In this document: positions 12,397-51,092 of the stretch, in pieces
Layout: each line of letters opens with the position of its first letter
How positions within the stretch are numbered: position 1 is the first letter of the stretch
IMG/VR virus record: IMGVR_UViG_3300009537_002640
Span: 1-64,000 of that record
Length of the DNA stretch: 64,000 nucleotides
Strand: one strand, 5' to 3'
Translations under genes and position numbers: made by a program
The notes under the pieces: generated by a model
The model's database searches: none
What the model was told of the DNA's origin: nothing
The model's input: only the letters and a program-made list of their open reading frames with translations

Positions 12397-12897
12397 TTAA
12401 CCTACGTGGATAACATTATATCCGTATGCATCCAATATGAATCCCTCATTCATTAGTGATACTTTATTTACCACATCAACCCCTGATTCGGTTTTTATGT
12501 ACCATCTATCTTCATCTTCTTCTATCTCGATAACTGATGTGCCTGATTTTAGTCTACCATTTCCAACTGCTATAGATTGTACAGTATCAGATACATTAGG
12601 GCGGTAAGCTAGTGAAAAGGCATACGAGTTGTTGTTTGGATCTACCTCTTCTCCATTAAATGCTCTAACATTAGAGTCTACGGTAACAACAAAAGAATCA
12701 AATTCAAACAAATTTTCTACCGTTAATCTTACCTGTTTTTCATCTATTTGCGTCACTGATGTGGTAAAAGCACCATGAGTAAATGTGTAATTATCCGGGT
12801 CTATCAATTGATCATCAGATAGCATAACAGTATCAAAATGAACCTCTACGGTTACTGGCCATGGGCGATTGATAGCATTAATAACTTTTGGTCCCAT
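12397..12897 (-). CDS. 166 aa protein paralogous to a C-terminal segment of the giant protein (Ig-like plus beta-rich module)
   Basis: GPKVINAINRPW...EDEDRWYIKTESGVDVVNKVSLMNEGFILDAYGYNVI aligns by eye with GPRVLAAVNEPF...EDHTNWYLATSGGIDVVSKIELENVGFVLDGYGFNAI in the 3634 aa protein. Confidence 0.8.
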   Translation of the reverse strand: MGPKVINAINRPWPVTVEVHFDTVMLSDDQLIDPDNYTFTHGAFTTSVTQIDEKQVRLTVENLFEFDSFVVTVDSNVRAFNGEEVDPNNNSYAFSLAYRPNVSDTVQSIAVGNGRLKSGTSVIEIEEDEDRWYIKTESGVDVVNKVSLMNEGFILDAYGYNVIHVG

Positions 12898-17939: not shown

Positions 17940-18036
17940 ATATGGTTATTCCTGAAAGTGAATAGTAAAAGGCGGGACTGCTATTAAAAGCAGCATAAAA
18001 AGAAGGTTTTTAAAGCAGCACGCCTGAGAAAACTAC

Positions 18037-18096
18037 AAATAAAAATAGGCACTTAAAGACATAGTGATCCTCTTGCACCACGTCTTTAAGTGCCTA
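18037..18096 (-). terminator. Rho-independent terminator after phoH, separating the metabolic block from the structural block
   Basis: Perfect 15-bp inverted repeat (taggcacttaaagac 18046-18060 / gtctttaagtgccta 18082-18096). It extends to 21 bp with G-U pairs in minus-strand RNA, has a 9-nt loop, and is followed on the minus strand by TTTTTATTT. Confidence 0.85.
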
Positions 18097-18130
18097 CAAC
18101 ACGTACAAATAAGCAAAAATATTAATAGTT

Positions 18131-19429
18131 TCAGAGTAATTCGGCGGCCTTCGTAGCCAACTCAGAGCGTTCTCCCTTCTTCAAACCTACATGAGCCGCG
18201 ATTGGCTCATCTTTGAACTTTTCAATAACATATGAGAGCCCATTATCTACCGCGTCGATAAAAGGATTATCTATCTGGTAGATGTCGCCTGTCAGGACGA
18301 CCTTAGAATCCTCTCCTACACGAGTGATAATAGTCTTTATTTCATGCCTTGTTAAATTCTGGCATTCATCTACTATGATAAAAGTCTTTGGAATAGAGCG
18401 CCCTCTGATATAGGTTAGCGCCTCGACCTGCAATCTACCGCCACGAGACTGTTCTAAGTCTAGATAGTCTGCGCCCTTTTCTGAAAATAGTAGGTCTAAG
18501 TTATCCTGCAAAGGCGCCATCCAGGGCTGCATTTTCTCTTCCTTTGTACCTGGCAGAAATCCCAAGTCTCTGCCCAAAGGCATAATTGGACGGGACATGA
18601 TTATCTTACGATAGGTATGGCTATCGTAGACCTGGCTAACACCAGCAGCTGCAGCCAGAAGTGTCTTACCACAACCAGCTTTACCTGTCAGAGTAACCAA
18701 TCTAATGTCAGGATTAAAGAGAGCATCGAATGCAAACGCCTGCTCTTTGTTACGAGGGTTTATTCCCCACACATTTGCTTTAGGCTCTATCTTGTGCAGC
18801 TGTCCACAAGAAAATCTAGCTAAGCCTGAGTGCTTAGGATTAACTTCTGAGCTTAATAGAACATACTGATTCTCATGGAATTGATGGACGAATCCACCAT
18901 CCATAAAGCCTAAATTATGAAACGTATCAATGTGAGATTCTGGAACCTGAACCTGAACACAACCGCTGTATATAGCTTCAGCTGTTTCTGCCACAGAGTC
19001 AGTATTGTAATCCTCAGCATCTACATTTAGGGCGTCACACTTCACCCGCATATTGATATCTTTGGTGATTAGTGCAACCACGCAGTCAGGGTGCGCTGAT
19101 TGCAATCCTAATGTAACGCTTATGATACGATTATCTGCCCGAGATGGGTCAAGGTGGGAAGGAACATTGTCCTTATGATTGATTTCAACACGAACCGTTC
19201 CACCTGCTGGTGTAGGCACACCTTCATGCAAATTACCCTGCTCACGCATTTCATCGAGTGAACGGATAACCATTCTTGCATGGCGTGCTACCTCATCTGG
19301 TCCGCTTTTCTTCTTGTCTAATTCATCTAAAACTACTAGGGGTATTACTACTTCATTATCATCAAATGCAAATAATGCTCTTGGGTCATGCAATAGGACA
19401 TTCGTGTCCAATACAAATATTTTGCTCAT
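18131..19429 (-). CDS. phoH: PIN domain-PhoH ATPase fusion (PhoH2/YlaK-like)
   Basis: N-terminal PIN (FVLDTNVLLHDP, VVLDELD, ADNRII, TKDINMR). C-terminal PhoH ATPase (GKAGCGKT, LGFLPG, YIRGRS, IIVDECQN, LTGDIYQID, RSELA). Confidence 0.93.
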   Translation of the reverse strand: MSKIFVLDTNVLLHDPRALFAFDDNEVVIPLVVLDELDKKKSGPDEVARHARMVIRSLDEMREQGNLHEGVPTPAGGTVRVEINHKDNVPSHLDPSRADNRIISVTLGLQSAHPDCVVALITKDINMRVKCDALNVDAEDYNTDSVAETAEAIYSGCVQVQVPESHIDTFHNLGFMDGGFVHQFHENQYVLLSSEVNPKHSGLARFSCGQLHKIEPKANVWGINPRNKEQAFAFDALFNPDIRLVTLTGKAGCGKTLLAAAAGVSQVYDSHTYRKIIMSRPIMPLGRDLGFLPGTKEEKMQPWMAPLQDNLDLLFSEKGADYLDLEQSRGGRLQVEALTYIRGRSIPKTFIIVDECQNLTRHEIKTIITRVGEDSKVVLTGDIYQIDNPFIDAVDNGLSYVIEKFKDEPIAAHVGLKKGERSELATKAAELL

Positions 19430-19467
19430 TAAAGGCGGTCTCCTTATTTGTGGGATTACTATTCATT

Positions 19468-19938
19468 TTAGCCTCTTGCTCTACCTCTGCGTTCACGTCT
19501 AATTTGTGTACGCTTCAGTATATCCCTAACCTTTTTATATTCCTTTAAAGTGAGCGGTGATGGTAACACTACAGTTTTGAATTTCTTGCTTAATCTCTTG
19601 TAAGTCTTTTTCAAGATATCACTTAGCGAGGTTATATCCTCGCCGCTCGTAATCTGTAGGCAGAGGGCTTTCTCTTCAAGCTCCTCTTTATTCACCGCAT
19701 CAACATCAATCTGATAAGGGGTAACTATGACACTGACATCCTCTAACTCATTCAGGACATCAGCTCGTCTAAAGCTTTCCCACGTCTCATCAACATCACT
19801 AATGGATGCTGGATGCTCATCGGTGCCTACTCTTACGACAGCTAACTTGCCATTAAGGTCTTTAGTAAAGTACGAACTCAAACTCACTGGTAAAAATTCG
19901 CCACTTTTAGTTTTTATGTAAAATTCACTCATCATCAA
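19468..19938 (-). CDS. Hypothetical protein, basic C-terminus
   Basis: 156 aa ORF packed co-directionally and overlapping its neighbour; no motif recognised. Confidence 0.7.
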   Translation of the reverse strand: MMMSEFYIKTKSGEFLPVSLSSYFTKDLNGKLAVVRVGTDEHPASISDVDETWESFRRADVLNELEDVSVIVTPYQIDVDAVNKEELEEKALCLQITSGEDITSLSDILKKTYKRLSKKFKTVVLPSPLTLKEYKKVRDILKRTQIRRERRGRARG

Positions 19939-20314
19939 GCCTCATGTTAAAACTAGACCATTTATTTAGATGTACTTCATAATATACATCTTTTCCCTCT
20001 ACCTTTCTAACAAAGGTGGGAGGCTTCCAGTGGGCAATAATATTCTCTTTAGATGGATTCAGCCAGTCAACCTCTTCTCCATCTGGCCCACGATGCATTG
20101 TTTTCTTGTATATCAGTACTTCGCCGGTAGTCTTGTATTCTACCTCTATACCGAGCTGATTCATGAGGTACAGATATTCATCTATATCTTCCGCTGATGC
20201 TACAGTATCTTCAGACACACCAAGGCTCAAAAGAACCTCCTGAACCCAGAAGTTCTTTTCCTCTTCAACCACCTTGTTTGCATCGGAAATATTGCATAGA
20301 ATCACATCAGCCAT
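19925..20314 (-). CDS. Hypothetical protein, probably from a leaderless transcript
   Basis: The track starts at 20329, but ATG 20314 (MADVILC) lies 6 nt after a TATAAT box and has no SD. Confidence 0.7.
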   Translation of the reverse strand: MADVILCNISDANKVVEEEKNFWVQEVLLSLGVSEDTVASAEDIDEYLYLMNQLGIEVEYKTTGEVLIYKKTMHRGPDGEEVDWLNPSKENIIAHWKPPTFVRKVEGKDVYYEVHLNKWSSFNMRLDDE

Positions 20315-20349
20315 ATGTATATTATACACTCTTTAGAAGAAACTTTCAA
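20313..20349 (-). promoter_or_regulatory. sigma70-type promoter (TTGAAA-17 nt-TATAAT) overlapped by palindrome TGTATA-N-TATACA
   Basis: -35 at 20344-20349, -10 at 20321-20326, 17-nt spacer. The 17-mer GTGTATAATATACATAT is identical to the one at 30744-30760. Confidence 0.8.
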
Positions 20350-20587
20350 TGGAGGCAAGCTTGGTTGGCTCAATTTTAAATGAGCCGGTTAAAGCCTTGT
20401 AACAATCATCACACAGGTGAAACTCCTCCCTGTCACCATCTTTAACAGAGCCGTAACCAAAATCAGATTCCAGACGTGTGCCTTCGTAAAATCCATGGGA
20501 ATCTATAATTGTAGACTTCTCACACTTGTTACAGAGTATATCCTTAACACACTCTTTTTCTACCATTTTGGTTTCTCTAATGAACAT
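20333..20587 (-). CDS. Small hypothetical protein with two CxxC motifs (putative Zn-binding)
   Basis: CNKC and CDDC motifs. Confidence 0.7.
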   Translation of the reverse strand: MFIRETKMVEKECVKDILCNKCEKSTIIDSHGFYEGTRLESDFGYGSVKDGDREEFHLCDDCYKALTGSFKIEPTKLASIESFF

Positions 20588-21066
20588 TAAACACCTGTGC
20601 TTCCAAACCCAGCTGCTCCTCTTTCTGATGGCACTGAAAGTTCATCAACCTCAACTACCTCGATTTCGGGCAACTTGTTTACTACTAATTGGGCAATGCG
20701 ACCGCCTACACTTAGTTCAAAGGTCACGTGTCCCATATTGATTAGGATTACTCCTACTTCGTTTCTATAGCCTGCGTCGATTGTTCCAGGGCTATTCACA
20801 ACACTAATTCCATTCTTTAGCGCCAATCCACTCCTGGGTCTAACTTGAGCCTCATAACCAGGAGGTATAGCCATTCCAAAGCCTGCTTTCACCAATACTC
20901 TATTGCCTGGCTCCAATCTAAAGTTGGTGACATCTAGAGGTCTCAAAACGCCCCTGATGACTTCATGGAACGAATGGGCATACAAATCAAACCCAGCGTC
21001 CGTTTCATGTGCCTTTGTAGGCAGTATGGAATCTTCGTATAACTTCTTAAATTCTACTCTTGCCAT
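20587..21066 (-). CDS. dut: Trimeric dUTPase
   Basis: AGFDL, QVRPRSGLA, GTIDAGYR, RIAQLV, RGAAGFGSTG motifs. Confidence 0.97.
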   Translation of the reverse strand: MARVEFKKLYEDSILPTKAHETDAGFDLYAHSFHEVIRGVLRPLDVTNFRLEPGNRVLVKAGFGMAIPPGYEAQVRPRSGLALKNGISVVNSPGTIDAGYRNEVGVILINMGHVTFELSVGGRIAQLVVNKLPEIEVVEVDELSVPSERGAAGFGSTGV

Positions 21067-21068
21067 TT

Positions 21069-21254
21069 TTAGGACCCTTTCTTAAAATGCTCTAGAAGCT
21101 TTTCAGCCAATTTATCAGGCTCGTCTTCATTATCTTTCAGAATCTCTACCATCTCATACATATGGTCTTTTACTTTCTTCTGAAACTCTGGCCCCTTATC
21201 GGCAGAAGCCTCAACTAATCTATCAATTGCCTCTTCAAGCTCTTTAGTATCCAT
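21069..21254 (-). CDS. Small helical hypothetical protein
   Basis: 61 aa with a TAGGAG SD; fills the gap between nrdJ and dut. Confidence 0.7.
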   Translation of the reverse strand: MDTKELEEAIDRLVEASADKGPEFQKKVKDHMYEMVEILKDNEDEPDKLAEKLLEHFKKGS

Positions 21255-21263
21255 TTATATCTC

Positions 21264-23681
21264 CTAACTGCACTTAGACCATCCACAGTCTTGACAAGTT
21301 ACGCAGCCTTCTTGATATATCATCGCCTCTGATTCACAAGAAGGGCATGTTTTATCGGATGTAACTCTTGTCCCATCCTCTATGTATTTCTTTAGAACTC
21401 GCGCCAATACTTTTGAGAAGCTGGTTAAATCACTATCAGGGTCTTTCTGCAGTTGCTCAACCAAGAATGATGGCTTTGCCCCATGTCTCAATGCAAGTGA
21501 TACCATCCTAGTATGTGTTTGGTATAGCACGTTGTCAAATACCTTTGTCACATTACGTATAGCTCCGTCTTCTCCAAAAGATAAATCGTATTTACTTTGT
21601 TTCTTAGTACTGGATGCTTTGGTAAGAACACCATCAGAAAACTTACGCGGTATCTCAACCATTTCAGATAGCCCGCCGAATACCTCATATGGTCTTCCGT
21701 TCATAAGTCCAACCAGAATAGTCCACTTCTCGCCCTTAACAGTTGCTTGGTGAATATGGCAAGGTAAGTCTTTGGGACGCTTTACTGCATCTCTGTAATC
21801 AAACTTATCTTTGCTACTCTCAGTAACCAGCACCCCACTACGAGAACCGTCTACGTAAACAGTAACGCCCTTCAGCCCCTCTTTCCAGCCTGCCATGTAA
21901 AGCTCACCAACAACTTCTGGCGGTGTACCACTGGGAAGATTAATGGTGCTTGAGATAGCGTGGTCTATGTGCCTTTGAATAGTGCCTTGAATCTGTACTC
22001 GACGCAACCAATCTATTTGGTCACTCTCCACAAAGAACTCAGGCAACTCAGCATCAGGCTTCAGCCCCTTAATATCAAGCCACTGTTTTACGTTATGATG
22101 GAAAACCTTAAACTCTTCCCACCTATCGCCCATATCATCCACAAAGTCATCAGGGGAGCCAGCATCGTTATGTGAACGCTTCTTGCGTCGAATATGCGCA
22201 TTCCTAAATACAGGCTCTAATCCAGAGCTAGTTTGAGATACTAGTGATACACTTCCTGTTGGGGCGTTGGTAAGATTAGCTATATTGCGCCTGCCGTTTT
22301 CTTTAACCAACTTAAGTACATCTACTGGTAAGTTCTTAATAAACTCATTATCCTTTTCTTTGTTCCAGTCCCATACAGGAAACGTGCCTCGTTCTCCTGC
22401 TAACCTGGCACTTTCAGAATATGATACCACCTTGAGAGTTTCGTAAATCCTATCTACTACCTCAAGAGCTGCATCCGAATCATACCTTAGTTGCAAACAT
22501 GCTAAAACATCAGCCAGACCATGAGTACCCAATCCGGTTCTACGGCCATCTTGTGCAGCCTTTAGAAGCTTAGTCCACATTGCTTTTTCATCAGGGGTGT
22601 CAGATATATTTAGGATATTCTCTAGCTTCTCAATCTCTAACTCAACCAGGTCATCTGATAATCTTTGTGCCATTGATACTGTATTCTCGAATTCTTCAAA
22701 ATCAAAGAACGCCTCATCTGTGAATTCGCCATGTACAAAGTTCTTTAGGTTGATAGAAATCAACCTACATGAGTCGTAAGCTGATAGAGGAATCTCAGAG
22801 CATGGGTTGGTAGAGATAGTCTTAAAGCCCACATCAGCATAAGCTTCGGCTGGCATATACTTCAAAATGTTATCCCACATTAACAAACCTGGCTCTGCAT
22901 AATTAGTTGCAGACTCCACTATTGTCTTCCAAAGTTCCTTGGCGTGAACCTTACGAGTTATCACTGGGTCATCGGAATCAATAGGGAAGCGCAGAGTGAA
23001 CATCTCGTCCTTTTCTACCGCTTCCATAAACTCATCCACCAGCCTGACTGAAACATTAGCTCCAGTGACTTTGGTAAGGTCGTTCTTCATTGTAACAAAT
23101 TTGAAAATATCGGGGTGCCGTACATCCATACTAATCATAAGAGCACCACGACGACCGTGTTGCCCAATCATACGACATGTATAGGAATACAAATCAGCAA
23201 AAGACCAAGCTCCAGTTGTGGTGCCAGCAGAATTATTCACTAGCGAGCCTTCGGGACGCAAAGTGGATATATCTAACCCGACACCACAACGGCGCTTGAA
23301 TAGATTAGCCAGCTCTTTACTGGCATCAACAATAGAAGATATTGTATCTTTTGGAGATTCCACTACGACACAATTTGACAAGGATACATTGACATAGTTG
23401 TTGCCAATACCCATCATAGGAGAGCCCTGAGGAACAATGTGTTTAAAATGTGCAAGCTGTGCGTAAATCTGTTCTTCAGACAACGCACGGTTTCCCCCAA
23501 ATTTCTTCTCCATCCTGGCAAACTCTTTAGCTAAACGCCGATGCATATCATCTGGCGTCTTCTCCATAAGATTGCCCTCTTTATCTTTAAGAGCATACTT
23601 GCTCATCCAAACATTAGCGGCTAATTGGTCGCCGCCGAAATATTCAAGTGTACTTTCTAATACCTCATTCTTGTCGTGCAT
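21264..23681 (-). CDS. nrdJ: Class II (adenosylcobalamin-dependent) ribonucleotide reductase
   Basis: SLSNC, RRGALM, TNPCSEIPL, APTGS.S, DHAISSTINLP, KGVTVYVDGSR. C-terminal TSCPD-like domain and Zn ribbon (CPSC...EGCVTCQDCGWSKCS). No small subunit is present. Confidence 0.93.
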   Translation of the reverse strand: MHDKNEVLESTLEYFGGDQLAANVWMSKYALKDKEGNLMEKTPDDMHRRLAKEFARMEKKFGGNRALSEEQIYAQLAHFKHIVPQGSPMMGIGNNYVNVSLSNCVVVESPKDTISSIVDASKELANLFKRRCGVGLDISTLRPEGSLVNNSAGTTTGAWSFADLYSYTCRMIGQHGRRGALMISMDVRHPDIFKFVTMKNDLTKVTGANVSVRLVDEFMEAVEKDEMFTLRFPIDSDDPVITRKVHAKELWKTIVESATNYAEPGLLMWDNILKYMPAEAYADVGFKTISTNPCSEIPLSAYDSCRLISINLKNFVHGEFTDEAFFDFEEFENTVSMAQRLSDDLVELEIEKLENILNISDTPDEKAMWTKLLKAAQDGRRTGLGTHGLADVLACLQLRYDSDAALEVVDRIYETLKVVSYSESARLAGERGTFPVWDWNKEKDNEFIKNLPVDVLKLVKENGRRNIANLTNAPTGSVSLVSQTSSGLEPVFRNAHIRRKKRSHNDAGSPDDFVDDMGDRWEEFKVFHHNVKQWLDIKGLKPDAELPEFFVESDQIDWLRRVQIQGTIQRHIDHAISSTINLPSGTPPEVVGELYMAGWKEGLKGVTVYVDGSRSGVLVTESSKDKFDYRDAVKRPKDLPCHIHQATVKGEKWTILVGLMNGRPYEVFGGLSEMVEIPRKFSDGVLTKASSTKKQSKYDLSFGEDGAIRNVTKVFDNVLYQTHTRMVSLALRHGAKPSFLVEQLQKDPDSDLTSFSKVLARVLKKYIEDGTRVTSDKTCPSCESEAMIYQEGCVTCQDCGWSKCS

Positions 23682-23719
23682 TGTCCTTATTTCTCCTGGT
23701 AGTATATTTTAGATACACT

Positions 23720-23760
23720 AATCCCTACAAGGGGGATACAACCTTAAACTTGTAGGGATT
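23720..23760. other. Intergenic hairpin between the sigma factor gene and nrdJ
   Basis: 12-bp perfect inverted repeat aatccctacaag / cttgtagggatt with a 17-nt loop; no U-tract. Confidence 0.65.
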
Positions 23761-23765
23761 GAGAA

Positions 23766-24416
23766 TTATCCGCTAAGTTCGCCAAGTAGTTGACTCTTGC
23801 GCAACTTAGAGATTGCCTTATTCTTGATTTGTCGGATACGCTCGTGGGTAAGATTGAACATAGGCCCTATCTCACGCAAAGTTTGTGGCTGACGGCCATC
23901 CAAACCGAAGATAAGCCTTACAATCTCACGGTCACGTTCTGGAAGCTCGCCAAGCACTTCTGCTATACGCTCATCACGTTCCTTGACAAAGAATTGCTCT
24001 TCGGGAGTTTCCTCCACCTGCTCTTCTTCCTTGCCAATTTCAGAAGGCTCTGCGTACACAACGCGAGTCTTGTCGGGATTGTACACGACATCGAAACGAC
24101 TTGCTGCACGCTTTACACTATGGCGAATCCATTGCTCCGAAAAGACGAAGAAGTTTGGGAAACGGTTATGGTCAAAGCGACGTACTGCCTTCACAAGACC
24201 AATAAACCCTTCCTGGACCAAATCTTCATAATTAGGGAAACTTCTATATGGTTTAGTTACACTATATACCAAAAAAGAAAGTTCGGTAACTATTCTGTTC
24301 TGGACCTTTTCTACCTGCTTCTCCAATTGATCACTTGACAGAGTGCCATCGGCCTTCAAATCATCAATACTACGAAACAGGTTCATTGCCTCTTCGTTGC
24401 TCATGTAACGACTCAT
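23766..24416 (-). CDS. Compact sigma70-family RNA polymerase sigma factor (regions 2 and 4)
   Basis: Region 2 YEDLVQEGFIGLVKAVRRFD...WIR. RpoD-like region 4 TLREIGPMFNLTHERIRQIKNKAISKLR. 216 aa, region 3 largely absent. Confidence 0.93.
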   Translation of the reverse strand: MSRYMSNEEAMNLFRSIDDLKADGTLSSDQLEKQVEKVQNRIVTELSFLVYSVTKPYRSFPNYEDLVQEGFIGLVKAVRRFDHNRFPNFFVFSEQWIRHSVKRAASRFDVVYNPDKTRVVYAEPSEIGKEEEQVEETPEEQFFVKERDERIAEVLGELPERDREIVRLIFGLDGRQPQTLREIGPMFNLTHERIRQIKNKAISKLRKSQLLGELSG

Positions 24417-24419
24417 AAC

Positions 24420-24977
24420 TTACTCCTCTTCGCTTACATCTTCAACTCTAAATACTTCTTTTAATTTTCCATCTTTCCAAACACGCACTGTGTTGGTCTC
24501 CTCACTAAGAGTTAATACACCAATTACATCGTCGCGTAAAGAAAAACTTGCTGCGGCTTTATGACGTGTGCCACAATCTTCAGGTGTATCTAACATTGGG
24601 TTTGCAACAACTAGATACACCCCCGCCCCTACAATCTGCCCAGACCTATCGACAACAACAGCGCCGTCATGGGGTGGGCGTGAGTACTCTATGACACACT
24701 GCTTTCCTGCCTCTGTGTCTATCATTCTAAGAGCCTCAATCGGATTCTGCTTAGGCTTCATTTGAACCATGCCATCTACTCTAGGTTCTTTTTCAAAATC
24801 TCCTAAGACAACAAGAGCACCCAGCGGATCTTCTATACCAGATGCAACAGCTTTGGCTAAGTCTTTCAGAATTTCAAAGATAGTTCGTTCAAACTTCTCA
24901 TTATTCTTGGCAAAGCTAAATTGCATACTAAAGTCCACATAAGGTGCCTCACTTTGCTTACTCTTTTCTTCTGTCAT
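24420..24977 (-). CDS. Stand-alone diadenylate cyclase (DisA_N/DAC domain, DacZ-like)
   Basis: GALVVLGD, NP, catalytic HDGAVVV, GAGVYL, GTRHKAAA (RHR-like motif), LSEE...VRVWKDG. Confidence 0.85.
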   Translation of the reverse strand: MTEEKSKQSEAPYVDFSMQFSFAKNNEKFERTIFEILKDLAKAVASGIEDPLGALVVLGDFEKEPRVDGMVQMKPKQNPIEALRMIDTEAGKQCVIEYSRPPHDGAVVVDRSGQIVGAGVYLVVANPMLDTPEDCGTRHKAAASFSLRDDVIGVLTLSEETNTVRVWKDGKLKEVFRVEDVSEEE

Positions 24978-24978
24978 T

Positions 24979-25482
24979 TCATTTTCTTTCTGTATCCTCT
25001 TTGGTAACTATTTTCATAGTAAAACCATCTATTACCATACGGTTGTTATCAAAGGAATACTCAATCGTGTCGTATGTGTGTCCTTGTTTTCTTCCATCCC
25101 AAAATACCATGGTGAAATTAGAGTTTTCAACAATGTGCTCATTTACGGTATTATCAAAGAATCCTCTTCCGTCGTCTGTTGTGGGCTTAATAATGCTTAG
25201 TGCATCAGCATATTGGTAAACCCTATTTAAGTCCTCTTTCTGTTCTTCGTACCAGTGCTGTCCCAAAACCTCTGGCAGATAGGGGAGAAATAAATGATAT
25301 TGTTTCTTGGTCTTCAGGCAATGCTTAGCCGCCCAGAGACCGACCCCGATGTTCACAGATATGTTATACACCAACTCATCGCCATATTGAAAGCTCAAAG
25401 TGTCAAGAGTTTCCTGGACACGCTTATCCTCCGCCTGACTAAATACATCAGGCGTATGTCCAACTACACCAACCTTGTACAT
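24979..25482 (-). CDS. SLOG-superfamily protein (YspA/DUF1273-like)
   Basis: VGVVGH start, GVGLWAA, LFLPY, YADA, NEHIVENS..MVFWDG...GHT..TIEY pattern typical of YspA-type SLOG. Confidence 0.65.
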   Translation of the reverse strand: MYKVGVVGHTPDVFSQAEDKRVQETLDTLSFQYGDELVYNISVNIGVGLWAAKHCLKTKKQYHLFLPYLPEVLGQHWYEEQKEDLNRVYQYADALSIIKPTTDDGRGFFDNTVNEHIVENSNFTMVFWDGRKQGHTYDTIEYSFDNNRMVIDGFTMKIVTKEDTERK

Positions 25483-25491
25483 ATATACCCT

Positions 25492-25680
25492 CTACTTGTT
25501 ATTTTCTTCTAGTTCTTCGAGCATCGATTGTAACGCCAGCTGTATAATCTCCACATTCTGCGTACTCATTATAGATTGTAATCGCAGTTGGAGTGTCTTG
25601 GCGTCTATTTCGACTCTCTGTTTACCATTAGAGGTTTTGGTCGTTTTCCAAAGACCCATCCTATTCATTGTTATCCTCAC
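25492..25680 (-). CDS. Small hypothetical protein
   Basis: Fills the gap between spoVR and SLOG; likely start ATG downstream of GGTGAGG. Confidence 0.55.
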   Translation of the reverse strand: MRITMNRMGLWKTTKTSNGKQRVEIDAKTLQLRLQSIMSTQNVEIIQLALQSMLEELEENNK

Positions 25681-27150
25681 CTATAAGATGTCAAATCCCG
25701 CTTCATCAAATACAAATGCTACCGGGTCTGCATCATCACCATAAGTTTTAAGTTCGACTGGTCCTCCCCATAGTTCATATATATATCCCATGGTTTTCTC
25801 AGTATACTTCTCATCTAAAGGGCCAAAGTCGTCTGAATGTTGGAGCATTAATATATCTCCATCTACCTGATTTACTGTCACAAGAGGTGCTCCATAATTA
25901 ATGGTGGGGCGAATTATATTTTCGATAATCTTATCTAACTCTCTATCTTTCAATTCAATAATACCGTACTCTTCGGGCAAATCATCTTCGTCCATACCTG
26001 GTTCTCGTTCATGTCTATATCCATAGTTGAACAAGCCCAGACTTGTAGCTAACTCAGGTGTTAGATAGTTACGTAAGAACGATGCGTCATCTTCTTCAGC
26101 CGCGACCTCTATTACCTTTTGTATGCCAGTGATATCTGATTCACCATCTTTGTACTTCTTATCCCACCTCTCTCGAATATCAGTAAACACTTTGAACCCT
26201 AAATAGTAAGGATTGATTCGGAAAGGGTGTCCTGGACTTACCACTGAAGCGTGGCACTTACAAAACTCTAAATGTTCCTCCTCACTTGTTTCATGATACT
26301 TAAACATTAGCTCCGCATGCCAAAAGGAAGCAAAGCCTTCATTCATAATCTTGGTCATAACAATGGGATAGAAGTAGTACGACTCTTCTCGTATAATACC
26401 AAGTATATCCTTCTCCCATTCTTCTAACGGAGCATAATTAGTAAGAAACCAAAGCAGGTCTCGCTCAGGATGCGGAGGTAGCTTTTCACCTTCCACCCGA
26501 TATCTTATGCTTCTCTTATTATTGTTGATATTTAGTAGATCGTCGAACTCATCCCTATGTACTTTTTCTTCTATTATGTGCTTATCAGGATAGCGTTTTC
26601 TATATACGCCTTTATGCCAATCTATGTGATTATCTAAAGCAAAACCTATATCCATTAGGTGTTCTACTTTCTCTAACCCATATTGCTCTACATAATCATC
26701 AACTCTAGCTGCTCTTTCTGCAGCTCTATAAATCATATTTCGGTCTGAACCCTTAAACATATGATTGTGCTTAAAAAAATGCACATGCCCAAAGACATGT
26801 GCTGCGACCATGATGTTAATTACATCCAAATTTGTATTCAAAAGGAAAGCATAAGATGGGTCATTATTGAATACAATCTCATACACTTTTGATAGCCCCA
26901 TCTCACCATATATCTTTTGGTGGTCATAGGAGCGACCGTATGACCAGTGGCGCGCTCTAACTGGTAAGCCATATGAACAAGCCTCCAGCATGATGTCTCT
27001 ATTAACATATTCAAAGATAGTAGGGAAGAAATCTAATCCCTCTTTACGGGCTAGCTCTTCCATGTCTTTGATTGCTTTAAATACGTATTCTTGGCCCATA
27101 ATAAATATCCTTACACAAGCATTGTGCCTGCCATAGTTACTGTTTTCCAA
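25681..27150 (-). CDS. spoVR: SpoVR/YcgB family protein
   Basis: YGLPVRARHWSYG, YEIVFNNDPSYAFLL, AHVFGHVHFFKHN, TKIMNEGFASFWH, INPYYLG, FLRNYLT, LWGGPVELKT. Confidence 0.95.
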   Translation of the reverse strand: MENSNYGRHNACVRIFIMGQEYVFKAIKDMEELARKEGLDFFPTIFEYVNRDIMLEACSYGLPVRARHWSYGRSYDHQKIYGEMGLSKVYEIVFNNDPSYAFLLNTNLDVINIMVAAHVFGHVHFFKHNHMFKGSDRNMIYRAAERAARVDDYVEQYGLEKVEHLMDIGFALDNHIDWHKGVYRKRYPDKHIIEEKVHRDEFDDLLNINNNKRSIRYRVEGEKLPPHPERDLLWFLTNYAPLEEWEKDILGIIREESYYFYPIVMTKIMNEGFASFWHAELMFKYHETSEEEHLEFCKCHASVVSPGHPFRINPYYLGFKVFTDIRERWDKKYKDGESDITGIQKVIEVAAEEDDASFLRNYLTPELATSLGLFNYGYRHEREPGMDEDDLPEEYGIIELKDRELDKIIENIIRPTINYGAPLVTVNQVDGDILMLQHSDDFGPLDEKYTEKTMGYIYELWGGPVELKTYGDDADPVAFVFDEAGFDIL

Positions 27151-27545
27151 TCGTGATTTAACAACTCTCGTATAGCTGGTTTATCCACTCTCTGATACTC
27201 ATCAATTAGCAGGTGTATATCTCTTGTTCTAATCCCATCAAAGCATCTATCATACATAGAGGTTGCTGCTGTCACACGCATTCTATCCACCCCTGTTCTA
27301 TTAACAAAAGCTTTGACATATTTTTGGGTGGGAACTACCACCATAAAATACTCATTGCGTGAATCAAATATATAAGCAAGTTTGCCCAGCATATTAGTTT
27401 TGCCTGACTGCCGAGGTACAGTACTAACAAAAGCACCATATTCTTGCCACCAAATATCTATCGCGGATGTATACTTTTTGATAGAGGGTAGATAAATATC
27501 ATGATGATATTTCCATCTATACAGCTCTAAATCCATATAGTTCAT
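27111..27545 (-). CDS. Minimal P-loop NTPase (terminase/SF-helicase-like ATPase fold, 144 aa)
   Basis: Walker A VPRQSGKT, FMVVVPT strand, Walker B LLIDE; overlaps both neighbours. Confidence 0.7.
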   Translation of the reverse strand: MNYMDLELYRWKYHHDIYLPSIKKYTSAIDIWWQEYGAFVSTVPRQSGKTNMLGKLAYIFDSRNEYFMVVVPTQKYVKAFVNRTGVDRMRVTAATSMYDRCFDGIRTRDIHLLIDEYQRVDKPAIRELLNHDWKTVTMAGTMLV

Positions 27546-28717
27546 TCTTCCTTACCCTCGATTCCTAAGAACTGTTTCAAACAAGTATAAATGTCTTCTT
27601 TCTGCTCAATAGCTGCTGTAAGAAAACGCGGATGGTCTATACTCTTCTCAAACTCTTGATGAAGGGTAGACCATCTAAACCCACTGCCCCCATAGTTGTA
27701 AAAGCTATCAGTATTAATTTCTCCGTACCCCACCGCACTGCACAGTTCTAGCAACTCTTTTACCAGCTCAACGCACTTCTCATTATCAGATGGCCAGTTG
27801 TCCCCATCACTAAAAGAGAATACGTAATTGTTCCATTGAGCAGGGGGATGATTAGCCTCTATATGCTCTAAGGCCAGCTTGAATGCTGAGCTACACATCG
27901 TTCCACCAGAGTTAGATATCTTGAAGAAGTTCTCTTCAGGAACCACAGCAGCTCTGGTATCGTGAGCAATAAAGATTAACTCTACGAAGTTATACTTGGT
28001 CTTACAAAAGTGCGCCAACCAAAAGAAGAATGATTTAGCTATGTACTTCTTATCGTCATCCATACTGCCTGAGCGGTCCATTAGGAAATACACAGCGGCA
28101 TTGGAGTGATATTCTTTCTCTAAGTCCCATATCTTGTAACGTAAATCTTCTGGGCGGATGTTCTTAATTTCCGCCTTGCCCTTTTTAGCATTACGCTTCA
28201 TGTTCTCGAAGATGGTGCGCTTCTTGTCTACGTTAGACAATGGGCCAACTTCTGCCAAGTCAGTGAACTTAATGTTCTCTGTCTCAATCTCTACTGCACT
28301 ATCCTTAGCCTCAAGCCAGGGCAAGTCAAGGTCTTCTAGCATCATCTGTATGATTTCAGCTAGCTCTACTTCTTCCTCGTAGATTTCATCACCAGCCTGA
28401 TCATCTGCCTGATTGCCAGTGCCTTTACCCTTACGCCCTGTGCCATCATGAGCAATCATATCTCCGGGCTTAGCATCGCCTTCGCCTTGGCCTACACCCT
28501 CTTTATTCTTATCATCAGCGTGCTTAAACCTATACGTATCTAGAAACTTGATAGGAATCTTAACCTTCCTCTTTCCATCAGAGGAGATAATGCTGGCATC
28601 ACTAACCAAATCCTTCAGATTCTCTCGTATGGCCTTTTTAACACGCTGGGAGTGTCGTGCAGAGTCACGCTTGCCGCGTTTACGCATTCCCCAGATATCT
28701 AGTAAGCTATCGCTCAT
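27542..28717 (-). CDS. yhbH: YhbH/YeaH (DUF444) vWA-domain protein
   Basis: RHSQRVKKAIRENL, KVKIPI, GQGEG, LEDLDLPWL, MIDAS motif LMDRSGSM, SGGTMCSSA, FSDGDNW. Confidence 0.93.
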   Translation of the reverse strand: MSDSLLDIWGMRKRGKRDSARHSQRVKKAIRENLKDLVSDASIISSDGKRKVKIPIKFLDTYRFKHADDKNKEGVGQGEGDAKPGDMIAHDGTGRKGKGTGNQADDQAGDEIYEEEVELAEIIQMMLEDLDLPWLEAKDSAVEIETENIKFTDLAEVGPLSNVDKKRTIFENMKRNAKKGKAEIKNIRPEDLRYKIWDLEKEYHSNAAVYFLMDRSGSMDDDKKYIAKSFFFWLAHFCKTKYNFVELIFIAHDTRAAVVPEENFFKISNSGGTMCSSAFKLALEHIEANHPPAQWNNYVFSFSDGDNWPSDNEKCVELVKELLELCSAVGYGEINTDSFYNYGGSGFRWSTLHQEFEKSIDHPRFLTAAIEQKEDIYTCLKQFLGIEGKEE

Positions 28718-28724
28718 TTTAACC

Positions 28725-30719
28725 TCATGTGGTTTTAGACATTAGTGAGTTCACATATCGTAGCAATTGATTTGCTGAATCGACATTATACCCATACTTA
28801 TCAACCAACGTCTCGATAACCTGATTGATTTTCTTCAACGCCTCAGGGTCAGGATTACGTGAGCTAACGGTCAGACGAATGATATCTGCACGCTCGTCGA
28901 ACAGCTGCTTCTCAAGAGCCTCTTTCAATTTAGCATGACTCTGATAGTCAAACTCAACACCATCGCTTCTACGCTGAAGTACCTTACGAAGTGCTTCCTG
29001 CCTAAAACTATCCTTAGTAGCATCACTGATTCCTACCTTCTCTTCGATACTTCTCATTAGCCCATGGTCTGGTTCGTGGTGCTCACCAAACTCATCAACC
29101 AAATCTGTATCATCTAGATAGGCAGCTACGTTATCTACGTAGTTGTTCAACAGGTTGTTGATTTCCTTATCGAAGTTGACAAAGAATGCCTTCTGAACTT
29201 CGGTCTTAGCCATCTTGGTATATTCCTCAATGACAGTCATGATAATCTCATCAAAGCGTTCGAGGTCTTCCTTACCAAACTTGGCACTGCTCTCAAAGTT
29301 TTCCTTAATAGACCTCAGTACATCAATAGGAGTTATGCAACGCAAGTTGTGCTTACTGAAGCAATCTGCAATACAGTTAAAGATGTAACGTGGACTCACT
29401 CCATCCATACCCTCTCTATCTGCCTCTTCCTTAATGTCCTTCAAGTCTTCCTTAGTGAAGCCATCGACATCGCTACTGTTATATAGATGTAGTTTCTTTA
29501 GTAGAGTAAGATTCTGGTCCTTACCTGGCTCTAGACGACTCATAACTGCAAACATAGATGCTACCTTAAGAGTAAGTGGAGCAACATGTACATCACCGAA
29601 ATCGGCTTCAGCAACCAGCTTCTTGTAAATCTTCTCTTCTTCATCTAAGATTAAGTTATACGGAGCCTTCACAACAATGATACGGTCATGCAACGCTTCC
29701 ATCTTAGTGTCCGCCAAGAAACGAGTATATTCGGTTTCATTGGTGTGCGCAAGAATAAACTCATCAGCGTAAATAAGTGGGAAACGCTCAGTTTTAATGG
29801 TCTTTTCTTGTGCTAAGGTTAGTAGTACATGAAGAAACTTAGGGTCAACCTTTAGCATTTCTATCATTTCCATAATGCCACGGTTTGCTACGTTTAATTC
29901 GCCATCAAACTTGTAAGCACGGGGGTCTGATTCAACACCAAACTCGCCTAACTTACTAAAGTCTACAGAGCCTACAAGCTCGGTAATAGATTGGTTCTTA
30001 GTATCGCCTGGTAAGAATGTACCTATGCCGATACGATTGGTTTCTGAAATGAACAGGCGTTTCACTGGCAACTTTAGCCATTCGCCATTATATTTATGGT
30101 CTAGTAGGTGTTGCACTGGCGGGGATAGTCTTGCTAACGGGTCAATCTTAATGCCGTACTTTTCTCGAAACATTGGTCGTAGGTCGACCGGAACAGCATT
30201 AAGTGGATTCTCGTGCATTGGAGAATCTGTAAGGGCATAAATCGCACCTTCTTTAGTGCGAGACCACGCTTCAAGCCCGTGCTTTAGAAGTGTAGCCATT
30301 TGACTCTTACCAGAGCTTGTTGGCCCGTACAGTAGCAAAATACGACGGCCAACTTGAGAGCCACTGGCTGCAGCCTTTAGGTACTTCACTACCTTATGAA
30401 TCATGTTATCAACGCCAAACAACTCCTGGTTAAAAAACTTGTACCTGGGAATCGTTTGTGTTTTGTCTTCCTCATCGTAGTCCACACCTGCACTGAGTAT
30501 CATATCTAATACTCGGGAATGGGCTAACTGAGCAAGTTTAGGGTTTTCTTGAACCAAAGGAATGAATTCTTCCAGGGTACCTTCCCACTCATGAGTATCC
30601 TGTTTCCTGCTAAACTCGGCGATATCTTTAAAGATATCTTGTTTAGTTCCTTGTCCCTCTAATGTCTTTTCATCGGACATAGTATTACCTCCACTGTTAA
30701 GAACCTTGCTTCTTGACAT
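28725..30719 (-). CDS. prkA: PrkA/YeaG family AAA+ protein
   Basis: Walker A LYGPTSSGKS, SPMHENPL, ESDPRAYKFDGELNVANRG, AHTNETEY, EALHDR, EGMDGVSPRY. There is a second in-frame ATG at 30680, also with GGAGG. Confidence 0.95.
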   Translation of the reverse strand: MSRSKVLNSGGNTMSDEKTLEGQGTKQDIFKDIAEFSRKQDTHEWEGTLEEFIPLVQENPKLAQLAHSRVLDMILSAGVDYDEEDKTQTIPRYKFFNQELFGVDNMIHKVVKYLKAAASGSQVGRRILLLYGPTSSGKSQMATLLKHGLEAWSRTKEGAIYALTDSPMHENPLNAVPVDLRPMFREKYGIKIDPLARLSPPVQHLLDHKYNGEWLKLPVKRLFISETNRIGIGTFLPGDTKNQSITELVGSVDFSKLGEFGVESDPRAYKFDGELNVANRGIMEMIEMLKVDPKFLHVLLTLAQEKTIKTERFPLIYADEFILAHTNETEYTRFLADTKMEALHDRIIVVKAPYNLILDEEEKIYKKLVAEADFGDVHVAPLTLKVASMFAVMSRLEPGKDQNLTLLKKLHLYNSSDVDGFTKEDLKDIKEEADREGMDGVSPRYIFNCIADCFSKHNLRCITPIDVLRSIKENFESSAKFGKEDLERFDEIIMTVIEEYTKMAKTEVQKAFFVNFDKEINNLLNNYVDNVAAYLDDTDLVDEFGEHHEPDHGLMRSIEEKVGISDATKDSFRQEALRKVLQRRSDGVEFDYQSHAKLKEALEKQLFDERADIIRLTVSSRNPDPEALKKINQVIETLVDKYGYNVDSANQLLRYVNSLMSKTT

Positions 30720-30743
30720 ATTGATCCTCCGTCTAAATTGGGT

Positions 30744-30780
30744 ATATGTATATTATACACCAACTTTTTGGCACTCTTAA
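30744..30780 (-). promoter_or_regulatory. sigma70-type promoter (TTAAGA-17 nt-TATAAT) upstream of prkA, overlapped by palindrome TGTATA-N-TATACA
   Basis: -35 at 30775-30780, -10 at 30752-30757. The 17-mer is identical to 20313-20329. Confidence 0.78.
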
Positions 30781-31041
30781 CTATTTTTCGCCATATAAAT
30801 CTAAGAAATGCTTATCTTTTCCCTGGCCCATTTCTTTCCTAATGCGGTCAGCATCAGGTGCTATTTTCTGATTGTACAAATCTTTAGCACTTAGCCATGT
30901 TCTATTATTCCACGCAGATAAAAGCTTTTTAAACTCTGTGCATTCGCATTCTGGACATGTAATTTCCGGAGGATCCTTACCACGCTGGAACTTCTCTAAC
31001 ACGAGTTCACATTTTTGACACTGGAAATTAAATAACGGCAT
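30781..31041 (-). CDS. FmdB-family zinc-ribbon protein
   Basis: MPLFNFQCQKC...CPECEC motif. Confidence 0.8.
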   Translation of the reverse strand: MPLFNFQCQKCELVLEKFQRGKDPPEITCPECECTEFKKLLSAWNNRTWLSAKDLYNQKIAPDADRIRKEMGQGKDKHFLDLYGEK

Positions 31042-50518: not shown

Positions 50519-50761
50519 TTACTTCTCCGCTTTCTCCCCAAGAAATTCTCCGAGCCTATCAATCATAGCCCTTTTGATGTCATCTCTATCCTTGACATGC
50601 TTTATATGTATCAAGTGCCACGTATCACCATCCACAAAACCTAAATGCAACGTCCGAGGGTTATTTTTGGGCTTAGGGTCGATGGCATTACCTAGAGCAT
50701 ATACAAAAGCTGTAGCAGCTGTTCCACCACCATAGCCCTTCTCTTTAAGCTTTTCACTCAT
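50519..50761 (-). CDS. Hypothetical protein
   Basis: Packed ORF. Confidence 0.6.
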   Translation of the reverse strand: MSEKLKEKGYGGGTAATAFVYALGNAIDPKPKNNPRTLHLGFVDGDTWHLIHIKHVKDRDDIKRAMIDRLGEFLGEKAEK

Positions 50762-50999
50762 CGTTGCTCGTATCCTGACTATGATTTCCTAAGAGCAGTG
50801 TAAGAAACAATTCTCGTTCTTGCCCATCTGACTGCACTGCCTTTACAGCTACAGCCTTACTATCCACTAGAAACTTTGTCAGTGCCACGGCGTTGTTCAA
50901 AACCTCGACACGGCTCATTCCCAGGGCTTTAGACAGACTTCCCAGAGTTTCATACTGAGTCTTGGAAACCCTCATCTGCTTACTATCATTCTGCTTCAT
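50754..50999 (-). CDS. Putative ribbon-helix-helix DNA-binding protein
   Basis: QMRVSKTQYETLGSLSKALGMSRVEVLNNAV fits an RHH pattern; GAGG SD. Confidence 0.6.
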   Translation of the reverse strand: MKQNDSKQMRVSKTQYETLGSLSKALGMSRVEVLNNAVALTKFLVDSKAVAVKAVQSDGQERELFLTLLLGNHSQDTSNDE

Positions 51000-51092
51000 T
51001 GTATTTACCTCACTTGAAGGGTCTTACTATATGAGCCAAATATTAATAGGTTCCTGCCCCGCTGCTGACACAAAAATGATATACTTCTGATA

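What the first reader, a model, noticed from the sequence alone, without database searches (positions are those of the whole stretch)
20313..30780. Identical 17-mer operator-like palindrome overlapping two sigma70 -10 boxes 10.4 kb apart
GTGTATAATATACATAT (minus strand) occurs exactly at 20313-20329 and 30744-30760. It contains the perfect inverted repeat TGTATA-A-TATACA, which covers the TATAAT box and the start site. Both copies have a -35-like hexamer at a 17-nt spacing. This is classic repressor-operator geometry and would co-regulate the prkA cassette with the operon leading to PIN-PhoH. The RHH protein at 50754-50999 is one candidate regulator.
Basis: partly seen in the sequence, partly recalled or inferred. 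Interest (0 to 1): 0.6.

Follow-up and report, generated by a model that had tools for sequence, protein, structure and literature searches.

The report
Repeated phage promoter, not an operator
The two identical 17-base sequences are two copies of a promoter type that this large uncultured phage and its relatives reuse; the palindrome appears to be a by-product of the promoter sequence, so the finding is largely ordinary.

Summary
GTGTATAATATACATAT occurs exactly twice, at 20313-20329 and 30744-30760 on the minus strand. Each copy has TATAAT and a -35-like hexamer 17 nt upstream.

The window is part of a 206-kb phage contig. Copy 2 lies in the 61-bp gap before prkA. That gene string runs prkA, DUF444, SpoVR, a diadenylate cyclase and a phage RpoD-like sigma factor. 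Copy 1 ends in the ATG of a conserved 129-aa gene, followed by PIN-PhoH, which implies a leaderless mRNA.

In the orthologous sites of relatives, the left part (GTG plus TAnnAT) is always kept. The right arm of the palindrome is not: the 6+6 palindrome survives in 0 of 17 sites. GTGTAnnAT is about six-fold enriched in non-coding DNA of this phage clade. A relative carries another, non-orthologous pair of promoters identical over 21 nt.

My conclusion is two copies of a reused sigma-70-type promoter, so co-expression is plausible. A repressor operator is not supported, though it is not excluded for this one lineage. No RNA data could be found, so no start site is shown.

The parts
20313..20329 (-). 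Copy 1 of the 17-mer. It holds GTG plus the -10 TATAAT (20326-20321) and an AT-rich discriminator. Its last two bases are the A and T of the orf129 start codon (ATG 20314-20312).
   Evidence: start codon fixed by N-terminal conservation in 13 orthologues
20344..20349 (-). -35-like hexamer TTGAAA of copy 1, 17 nt from the -10. It lies inside the 3' end of the 84-aa zinc-ribbon ORF (20333-20587).
30744..30760 (-). Copy 2 of the 17-mer, with -10 TATAAT at 30757-30752. The predicted start is near 30745, giving a leader of about 26 nt with GGAGG before the prkA ATG at 30719.
   Evidence: the start site is inferred from the usual 7-nt distance and was not measured
30775..30780 (-). -35-like hexamer TTAAGA of copy 2, directly after the TAG stop of the FmdB-type zinc-ribbon gene (30781-31041). 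TAG plus TTAAnn is kept in several relatives.
19925..20314 (-). orf129, a conserved 129-aa protein of unknown fold and first gene behind copy 1. It has no Shine-Dalgarno sequence and is a likely leaderless mRNA.
   Evidence: fold search without a match
18131..19938 (-). o156 (19468-19938) and PIN-PhoH (18131-19429), the rest of the short operon behind copy 1.
18046..18096 (-). Strong hairpin followed by a T-run: the likely terminator closing the orf129/PIN-PhoH unit.
   Evidence: I2; -33.5 kcal/mol, z -6.9
23766..30719 (-). Gene string behind copy 2: prkA, DUF444, o144, SpoVR, a small ORF, YpsA/SLOG-like (24979-25482), diadenylate cyclase (24420-24977) and an RpoD-like sigma factor (23766-24416).
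   Evidence: same order in relatives
23690..23760 (-). Hairpin after the sigma gene, then the conserved motif TGTATCTAAA just before the ribonucleotide reductase gene. This is the likely end of the prkA-to-sigma unit and the start of the next one.
   Evidence: (z -3.8)

Best explanation
The two 17-mers are two copies of one promoter type that this uncultured large phage and its relatives reuse. The type has a weak -35, the triplet GTG at -15 to -13, a TAnnAT -10 hexamer (here the perfect TATAAT) and an AT-rich discriminator. It is most simply read by the host's primary sigma factor.

Copy 2 starts the unit prkA, DUF444, SpoVR, diadenylate cyclase and phage sigma factor, with a normal leader and Shine-Dalgarno sequence. 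Copy 1 is placed so that transcription begins at the A of the orf129 ATG. That gives a leaderless mRNA for orf129, o156 and PIN-PhoH.

The palindrome arises because GTGTATAAT already supplies one arm plus the centre, and the AT-rich discriminator happens to read ATACA. Identity beyond the core reflects copying or homogenisation between promoters within a genome, or selection for one best sequence, as in other phages with near-identical repeated promoters.

Shown: the sequences, their placement, their conservation, and the enrichment of the motif in non-coding DNA. Inferred: that transcription starts there, which sigma factor reads them, and their timing in infection.
For: 1) Both copies are the top two sigma-70-type matches in 13.4 kb, in the gene orientation.
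2) All 10 close-clade lineages (PrkA 72% identity or more) have GTGTA-nnA-T/C upstream of prkA. Nine lineages have GTG-TAnnAT 5-7 nt before the orf129 ATG, with no Shine-Dalgarno sequence.
3) The orf129 N-terminus (M..[VI][IL]LCN[IL]SD) is conserved from residue 1 in 13 orthologues. ATG 20314 is therefore the start, and the -10 ends 6 nt before it.
4) In the two lineages without this promoter, orf129 abuts the stop codon of the upstream gene, i.e. translational coupling.
5) GTGTAnnAT: 28 of 88 dominant-strand occurrences lie in the 5.6% non-coding DNA of 593 kb from the clade (binomial 3e-14). An ATG 5-8 nt after the hexamer occurs in 14/31 non-coding sites against 8/60 coding sites (Fisher 0.0015).
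6) The same contig has GTGTATAAT promoters without the palindrome at 94988 (before a glycosyltransferase gene) and 198848.
7) Relative G001 has about 10 intergenic sites of this class. Two are identical over 21 nt at non-orthologous positions, both with the leaderless layout.
8) Positions 1-9 of the 17-mer are kept in 12-17 of 17 orthologous sites, positions 10-17 in 2-11 of 17, and the full palindrome in 0 of 17.
9) No RNA polymerase beta-subunit or T7-type polymerase domain was found in the 206 kb, though the T7-type search rang in no control genome and so is uninformative. This fits use of the host core enzyme.
Against: No transcript data exist: no sequencing run was listed, so no start site is shown. 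GTG at -15 to -13 is not the canonical extended -10 (TGn), and the -35 is weakly conserved, so a non-host sigma factor cannot be excluded. Identity in the eight bases after TATAAT is more than independent AT-rich discriminators would give; my rough estimate is 0.4^8 per pair. In five genomes the two sites resemble each other more than they resemble orthologous sites elsewhere. This could instead reflect a shared trans-acting reader. The host is unknown, and the closest cultured phages share only 37% PrkA identity.
Confidence: 0.7

Rival explanations
1. Promoter plus operator. In this phage lineage a dimeric DNA-binding protein, for example the RHH-like product of 50754-50999, binds TGTATA-A-TATACA over the -10 and start site. 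It would repress both units together.
For: There is a perfect 6+6 dyad at both sites, and it overlaps the -10 and +1 as in many repressed promoters. An RHH/CopG-like small protein is encoded in the window. Close relatives keep GTATA-A-TATAC (5+5) at the orf129 site (L103, L107). One intergenic site in G001 reads GTGTATCATATACA.
Against: The right arm is not conserved: the full dyad is kept in 0 of 17 orthologous sites and the G3-C13 pair in 2 of 17. The closest prkA orthologue (90% identity) already breaks it (TATAGA). Conservation is asymmetric and matches the promoter elements, not two half-sites. There are only two sites in 206 kb and no extra half-sites. The RHH-like gene is 20 kb away behind the other promoter type, and no orthologue was found in the relatives' DNA held here. 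orf129, the leaderless first gene, shows no DNA-binding fold.
Confidence: 0.12
2. Extended promoter read by a phage factor. The segment from -15 to about +2 would be recognised by the phage's own RpoD-like sigma factor (23766-24416), or by a sigma-modifying protein. It would co-evolve with that factor, making the two promoters a dedicated pair in each genome.
For: The phage encodes a sigma factor whose regions 2 and 4 resemble RpoD, and it lies in the unit started by copy 2. GTG at -15 to -13 is invariant yet is not a canonical host element. In five genomes holding both sites, the true within-genome pairing scores best of 120 permutations with gaps allowed (7 of 120 ungapped). Examples are L116, L108/L118, L146 and G001.
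Against: TATAAT/TAATAT with 17-nt spacing is what a primary sigma factor reads. If the promoter needed the phage sigma factor, that factor's own gene would need another way to be expressed first. A different, more abundant motif (aaatCTAyTAATATtt; 10 intergenic copies here and 8 in G001, before tail-sheath-like genes) is the better candidate for the phage sigma factor. The co-variation rests on five genomes and on low-complexity TA-rich sequence. Other GTGTATAAT promoters in the same genome do not share the downstream part.
Confidence: 0.13
3. Chance repeat with no function: an AT-rich 17-mer that happens to occur twice.
For: The exact 17-mer occurs once each in 89 unrelated IMG/VR contigs. 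Many 15-17-nt two-copy near-repeats exist in the region.
Against: The expected count in the window is 0.04. Both copies sit at gene starts in the gene orientation, with -35 hexamers, and the core is conserved at both orthologous positions across the clade.
Confidence: 0.03

Closest known systems
Sigma-70-type early promoters repeated in near-identical form in T4-type phages (PeSL cassettes; Arbiol et al. 2010, PMC2839356; Comeau et al. 2014, PMC4122927)
   Same: These are strong sigma-70-like promoters present as near-identical short copies within one phage genome, placed at the borders of gene modules. Here too the DNA just upstream of copy 1 varies among relatives: the dUTPase and small zinc-ribbon ORFs are present, moved or absent. 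A relative has another identical pair.
   Different: No terminator stem-loop accompanies either copy. The repeat is only 17 nt. There are few copies rather than dozens. Recombination between the copies is not shown.
Leaderless genes with the -10 element adjacent to the ORF (lambda cI from PRM; Deinococcus-Thermus genomes, PMC12340547; Thermus phage phiYS40 middle and late genes, Sevostyanova et al. 2007, recalled from memory because the paper was not held)
   Same: A TAnnnT-type -10 lies 5-7 nt before an ATG with no Shine-Dalgarno sequence, and the spacing is conserved across orthologues.
   Different: Only some genes of this phage use the layout. Copy 2 of the same promoter has a 26-nt leader with GGAGG. 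The host phylum is unknown. No 5' ends have been mapped.
Repressor operators overlapping the -10/+1 region (for example CopG-type RHH repressors with a 13-bp pseudo-symmetric element; recalled from memory)
   Same: A 13-bp dyad over the core promoter, with an RHH-like protein encoded in the window.
   Different: The dyad is not conserved in any relative. No cognate protein is linked to it, and there is no second subsite.

Membership tests
Sigma-70-type (-35/-10) promoter | -10 hexamer close to TATAAT, with A at position 2 and T at position 6 | tested here: met
   Perfect TATAAT at 20326-20321 and 30757-30752
Sigma-70-type (-35/-10) promoter | -35-like hexamer at 16-18 nt | tested here: met
   TTGAAA and TTAAGA at 17 nt. 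Across the clade the -35 is only weakly conserved.
Sigma-70-type (-35/-10) promoter | Placed upstream of a gene in its orientation, and conserved at the orthologous place | tested here: met
   10 of 10 prkA sites and 9 of 11 orf129 sites keep GTG-TAnnAT. The motif is six-fold enriched in non-coding DNA.
Sigma-70-type (-35/-10) promoter | Mapped transcription start | not testable with these tools
   No sequencing run was listed for this DNA.
Palindromic repressor operator | Dyad symmetry | tested here: met
   TGTATA-A-TATACA at both sites
Palindromic repressor operator | Both half-sites conserved or co-varying in relatives | tested here: not met
   Full dyad in 0 of 17 orthologous sites. Only the left arm, which is the promoter core, is conserved.
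Palindromic repressor operator | Cognate DNA-binding protein linked to the site | tested here: inconclusive
   An RHH-like protein lies at 50754-50999, but it is 20 kb away and has no orthologue in the relatives' DNA held here. Binding is not testable here.
Leaderless mRNA (-10 adjacent to the ORF) | -10 ends 5-8 nt before an AUG start, with no Shine-Dalgarno sequence | tested here: met
   6 nt in the window and 5-7 nt in eight other lineages; no GGAG upstream
Leaderless mRNA (-10 adjacent to the ORF) | The AUG is the true start codon | tested here: met
   The N-terminus is conserved from M1 in 13 orthologues. The upstream in-frame GTG at 20329 is not supported.
Leaderless mRNA (-10 adjacent to the ORF) | 5' end of the mRNA at the start codon | not testable with these tools
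   No RNA data
PeSL-type promoter cassette of T4-like phages | Promoter joined to a terminator stem-loop | tested here: not met
   There is no G+C-rich stem-loop next to either copy. Copy 2 has only a weak imperfect inverted repeat (z -2.6).
PeSL-type promoter cassette of T4-like phages | Near-identical copies within a genome at the borders of variable modules | tested here: inconclusive
   There are two identical copies here and another identical pair in G001. Gene content upstream of copy 1 varies among relatives. No recombination product was seen.

The most novel reading that the evidence does not exclude
The segment from -15 to +2 is read by a phage-encoded protein, either the RpoD-like sigma factor made from the copy-2 unit or a small repressor such as the RHH-like protein. 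It co-evolves in the prkA and orf129 promoters of each genome. This would form a dedicated two-promoter circuit tying a PrkA/DUF444/SpoVR, c-di-AMP and sigma module to a leaderless orf129/PIN-PhoH module in a clade of uncultured large phages.
Probability: 0.12. Interest if true: 0.55.

Novelty: new member of a known kind. Interest (0 to 1): 0.25.

Why it matters
In itself it matters little: phages commonly reuse one strong promoter sequence, and the palindrome does not survive comparison with relatives. The useful results are these:
- A first promoter map for an uncultured clade of large phages (contigs up to 468 kb) that carry prkA, DUF444 and spoVR.
- A conserved GTG-TAnnAT promoter class that is often fused to the start codon, giving leaderless genes.
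- A second, clade-wide motif (aaatCTAyTAATATtt) before tail-sheath-like genes.
- A phage RpoD-like sigma factor placed at the end of the prkA unit.

Together these suggest a simple early-to-late cascade that could be tested in vitro without a cultured host.

Tried and rejected
- Exact 17-mer scan of IMG/VR: 89 unrelated contigs with one copy each. This is chance level and uninformative.
- Megablast of 13 kb against cultured phages found nothing. The PrkA tblastn found only distant phages of 37% identity or less.
- Single-protein locus searches found only one relative. Alignment-based searches and the protein database were needed.
- RNA evidence: no sequencing run was listed.
- RNA-structure reading of the palindrome: copy 1 folds no better than shuffles (z +0.9). 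Copy 2 has a lineage-specific imperfect inverted repeat (z -2.6) that the 90%-identical relative does not keep.
- orf129 as an autoregulator: an AlphaFold model (pLDDT 74) gave no PDB match and no helix-turn-helix.
- GTG 20329 as the start of orf129: rejected on N-terminal conservation.
- A sporulation sigma-E-like reading of ATACATAT was considered and dropped, because that part is not conserved.
- A third near-copy at 25360-25376 (16/17 to the prkA promoter, including its upstream AGTTG) lies inside a gene. It is no better than other chance repeats in the region.
- Sevostyanova et al. 2007 could not be read.
- Slips: searches failed on bad coordinates or a bad search term.
Full report
OBSERVATION. 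The 17-mer GTGTATAATATACATAT is on the minus strand at 20313-20329 and 30744-30760, exactly as reported. No other copy with up to 2 mismatches exists in the window (expected 0.04) or in the whole 206,495-bp contig. It contains TGTATA-A-TATACA. The consensus scan finds TTGAAA-17-TATAAT and TTAAGA-17-TATAAT. These are the two best sigma-70-type matches between 17800 and 31200. Similarity ends at the borders of the 17-mer.

CONTEXT. The window is the first 64 kb of an IMG/VR virus record. The record is linear and estimated at 25% complete. It is 96% coding, with 168 of 180 ORFs on the minus strand, so it is a fragment of a large phage. No close cultured relative exists.

Copy 2 lies in the 61-bp gap between an FmdB-type zinc-ribbon gene and prkA. 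Behind it the genes run without a gap large enough for a terminator:
- prkA and DUF444
- a 144-aa ORF
- SpoVR and a small ORF
- a YpsA/SLOG-like protein
- a diadenylate cyclase
- a 216-aa sigma factor whose regions 2 and 4 resemble RpoD

After the sigma gene comes a hairpin (z -3.8), followed by a conserved TGTATCTAAA motif before the ribonucleotide reductase gene.

Copy 1 sits 3 nt after the stop of an 84-aa zinc-ribbon ORF. Its last bases run into the ATG at 20314-20312. Behind it are orf129, a 156-aa ORF and PIN-PhoH, closed by a strong terminator hairpin at 18046-18096 (z -6.9).

START OF orf129. The ORF finder begins this frame at GTG 20329, inside the 17-mer. Thirteen orthologues all begin M-x-x-[VI]-[IL]-L-C-N-[IL]-S-D, aligned from residue 1. 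ATG 20314 is therefore the start, and the 17-mer is non-coding apart from its last two bases. The -10 ends 6 nt before the ATG and there is no Shine-Dalgarno sequence. With the usual 7-nt distance, transcription would begin at the A of the ATG and give a leaderless mRNA. This is inferred, not measured.

RELATIVES. One IMG/VR relative (G001, 158 kb, PrkA 74% identical) keeps the gene order. Protein searches and contig look-ups gave more lineages for orf129 and prkA. Anchored on GTGTA, the prkA sites read:
- window: GTGTATAATATACATAT
- L112 (90% PrkA identity): ..TATAATATAGATAT
- L116: ..TAATATTATATATA
- L118: ..TATAATAAAGTAAG
- L138: ..TATAATTCTAATAA
- L142: ..TATAACATTAATAT
- L143: ..TATATATAAATATA
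- L145: ..TACAATATAAGTAT
- L146: ..TAATATTATATAAG
- G001: ..TATTATTAATAGTA

The orf129 sites keep GTG-TAnnAT 5-7 nt before the ATG in L103, L105, L107, L108, L109, L116, L146 and G001. In L110/L111 and L138 there is no promoter, and the ATG abuts the stop codon of the reductase gene.

Per position, bases 6-9 of the 17-mer are kept in 12-16 of 17 other sites and bases 10-17 in 2-11 of 17. The C that pairs with the G of GTG is kept in 2 of 17, and the full 6+6 palindrome in 0 of 17. Bases 1-5 served as the alignment anchor. What is observed there is that every one of these upstream regions has such an anchor at the right distance.

A PROMOTER CLASS. Across 593 kb from the close clade, 28 of 88 dominant-strand GTGTAnnAT sites lie in the 5.6% of DNA that is non-coding (binomial 3e-14). 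The profile shows a weak -35 (T at the first and A at the fourth position), an invariant GTG, TAnnAT, and an A/T-only discriminator. An ATG 5-8 nt after the hexamer is found in 14 of 31 non-coding sites against 8 of 60 coding ones (Fisher 0.0015).

In the window's own contig, two further GTGTATAAT promoters have different downstream bases: 94988 (before a glycosyltransferase gene) and 198848. G001 has about ten intergenic members. Two of them, at non-orthologous places, are identical over 21 nt and both have the leaderless layout. Identical promoter pairs therefore recur in this clade and are not peculiar to prkA and orf129.

SECOND MOTIF AND THE SIGMA FACTOR. A different motif, aaatCTAyTAATATtt, occurs at 10 intergenic places on the minus strand of the contig, including 18119-18128 and 51040-51049. 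It occurs at 8 places in G001. It precedes tail-sheath-like and other large genes. No RNA polymerase beta-subunit or T7-type polymerase domain was found in the 206 kb (the T7-type search rang in no control genome, so it says little). Exactly one sigma gene was found.

The simplest model, which is inference, is this. Host primary sigma reads GTG-TAnnAT early. One such promoter (copy 2) makes the phage sigma factor. That factor then reads the CTAyTAATAT class.

OPERATOR TEST. A dimeric repressor would constrain both arms. Here only the arm that coincides with the promoter core is conserved. The nearest prkA orthologue already breaks the dyad, and no relative keeps it. The RHH-like protein is real as a lead. 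However, it has no Pfam or NCBIfam hit, sits behind the other promoter type, and has no orthologue in the relatives' DNA held here. orf129 has no recognisable DNA-binding fold. The operator reading is thus unsupported, but it is not excluded for the sub-lineage (window, L103, L107) that keeps GTATA-A-TATAC.

WHAT REMAINS ODD. Identity over the eight bases after TATAAT is more than independent AT-rich discriminators would give; my rough estimate is 0.4^8 per pair. In the five genomes holding both sites, the true pairing scores best of 120 permutations when one gap is allowed, and 7 of 120 ungapped. With five genomes and TA-rich low-complexity sequence this is only suggestive. It fits homogenisation or copying between promoters, as described for the PeSL cassettes of T4-type phages (PMC2839356, PMC4122927). 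It also fits a shared phage-encoded reader.

COMPARISON AND VERDICT. This works like a sigma-70-type phage promoter, and all testable membership features are met. Copy 1 also has the layout of leaderless genes with a -10 adjacent to the ORF (PMC12340547; phiYS40 recalled from memory). It fails the conservation test for a palindromic operator, and it lacks the stem-loop that defines PeSLs. It is a new member of a known kind. No start site is shown, because no RNA run could be listed, and the host is unknown.

Noticed in passing
window 18119-18128 and 51040-51049 (minus strand); eight more places on the contig up to 198882: A second recurrent intergenic motif, aaatCTAyTAATATtt, has 10 copies on the coding strand of the 206-kb contig and 8 in relative G001. 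It lies before tail-sheath-like and other large genes, and is a likely late promoter, possibly read by the phage sigma factor.
   Followed up: partly
window 23766-24416 (minus strand): A phage-encoded 216-aa sigma factor has regions 2 and 4 most like RpoD. It is the last gene of the unit started by copy 2, is conserved at this place in relatives, and is the only sigma gene in the 206 kb.
   Followed up: partly
window 24420-25482 (minus strand): A diadenylate cyclase (DAC domain) and a YpsA/SLOG-like protein sit between spoVR and the sigma gene. The phage may therefore make c-di-AMP alongside PrkA, DUF444 and SpoVR.
   Followed up: no
window 19925-20314 (minus strand): orf129 is a conserved family found only in this phage clade (8 database relatives). 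Its model has an N-terminal helical part and a C-terminal beta part (pLDDT 74) with no PDB match. It always lies between the reductase/dUTPase genes and PIN-PhoH.
   Followed up: partly
window 18030-18128 (minus strand): The CTATTAATAT motif at 18128 is followed within about 30 nt by a 22-bp perfect-stem hairpin plus a T-run, and only then by the 1680-aa gene. This order, promoter-like motif before a terminator, is unexplained.
   Followed up: no
window 23690-23760 (minus strand); L103, L107, L108, L116, G001: The motif (G)TGTATCTAAA, just after a hairpin and before the reductase (or dUTPase) gene, is conserved in five relatives. It shares GTGTAT with the 17-mer but has no TAnnAT in register.
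   Followed up: partly
window 25360-25376 (minus strand): AGTTGGTGTATAACATA inside the YpsA-like gene matches the prkA promoter at 16 of 17 bases, including its upstream AGTTG. It could be an internal promoter for the cyclase and sigma genes, or chance.
   Followed up: no
window 30680-30719 (minus strand): prkA has two in-frame ATGs 39 nt apart, each preceded by GGAGG. The public gene call uses the second (651 aa) and the longest ORF the first (664 aa).
   Followed up: no
L108 (SpoVR, PIN-PhoH), L110 (a 2290-aa reductase), and several PrkA homologues of about 1000-1065 aa: Relatives carry inteins with LAGLIDADG domains inside SpoVR, PhoH, the ribonucleotide reductase and PrkA. The window's copies are intein-free.
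   Followed up: no
window 1490-12394 and 12897-17939 (minus strand): Two very long ORFs (3634 aa and 1680 aa) lie downstream of the PIN-PhoH unit. They were not analysed.
   Followed up: no
G001:76877 and G001:12106 (minus strand): These are two non-orthologous promoters identical over 21 nt (ATAGTGTATAATATAATTATG), both fused to an ATG. The one at 76877 is enclosed by a 9-bp inverted repeat followed by a T-run.
   Followed up: partly
protein P0045: A 74%-identical PrkA on a 247-kb contig is labelled in NCBI as a Patescibacteria MAG. Given the synteny of this clade, that contig is probably a phage binned by mistake.
   Followed up: no
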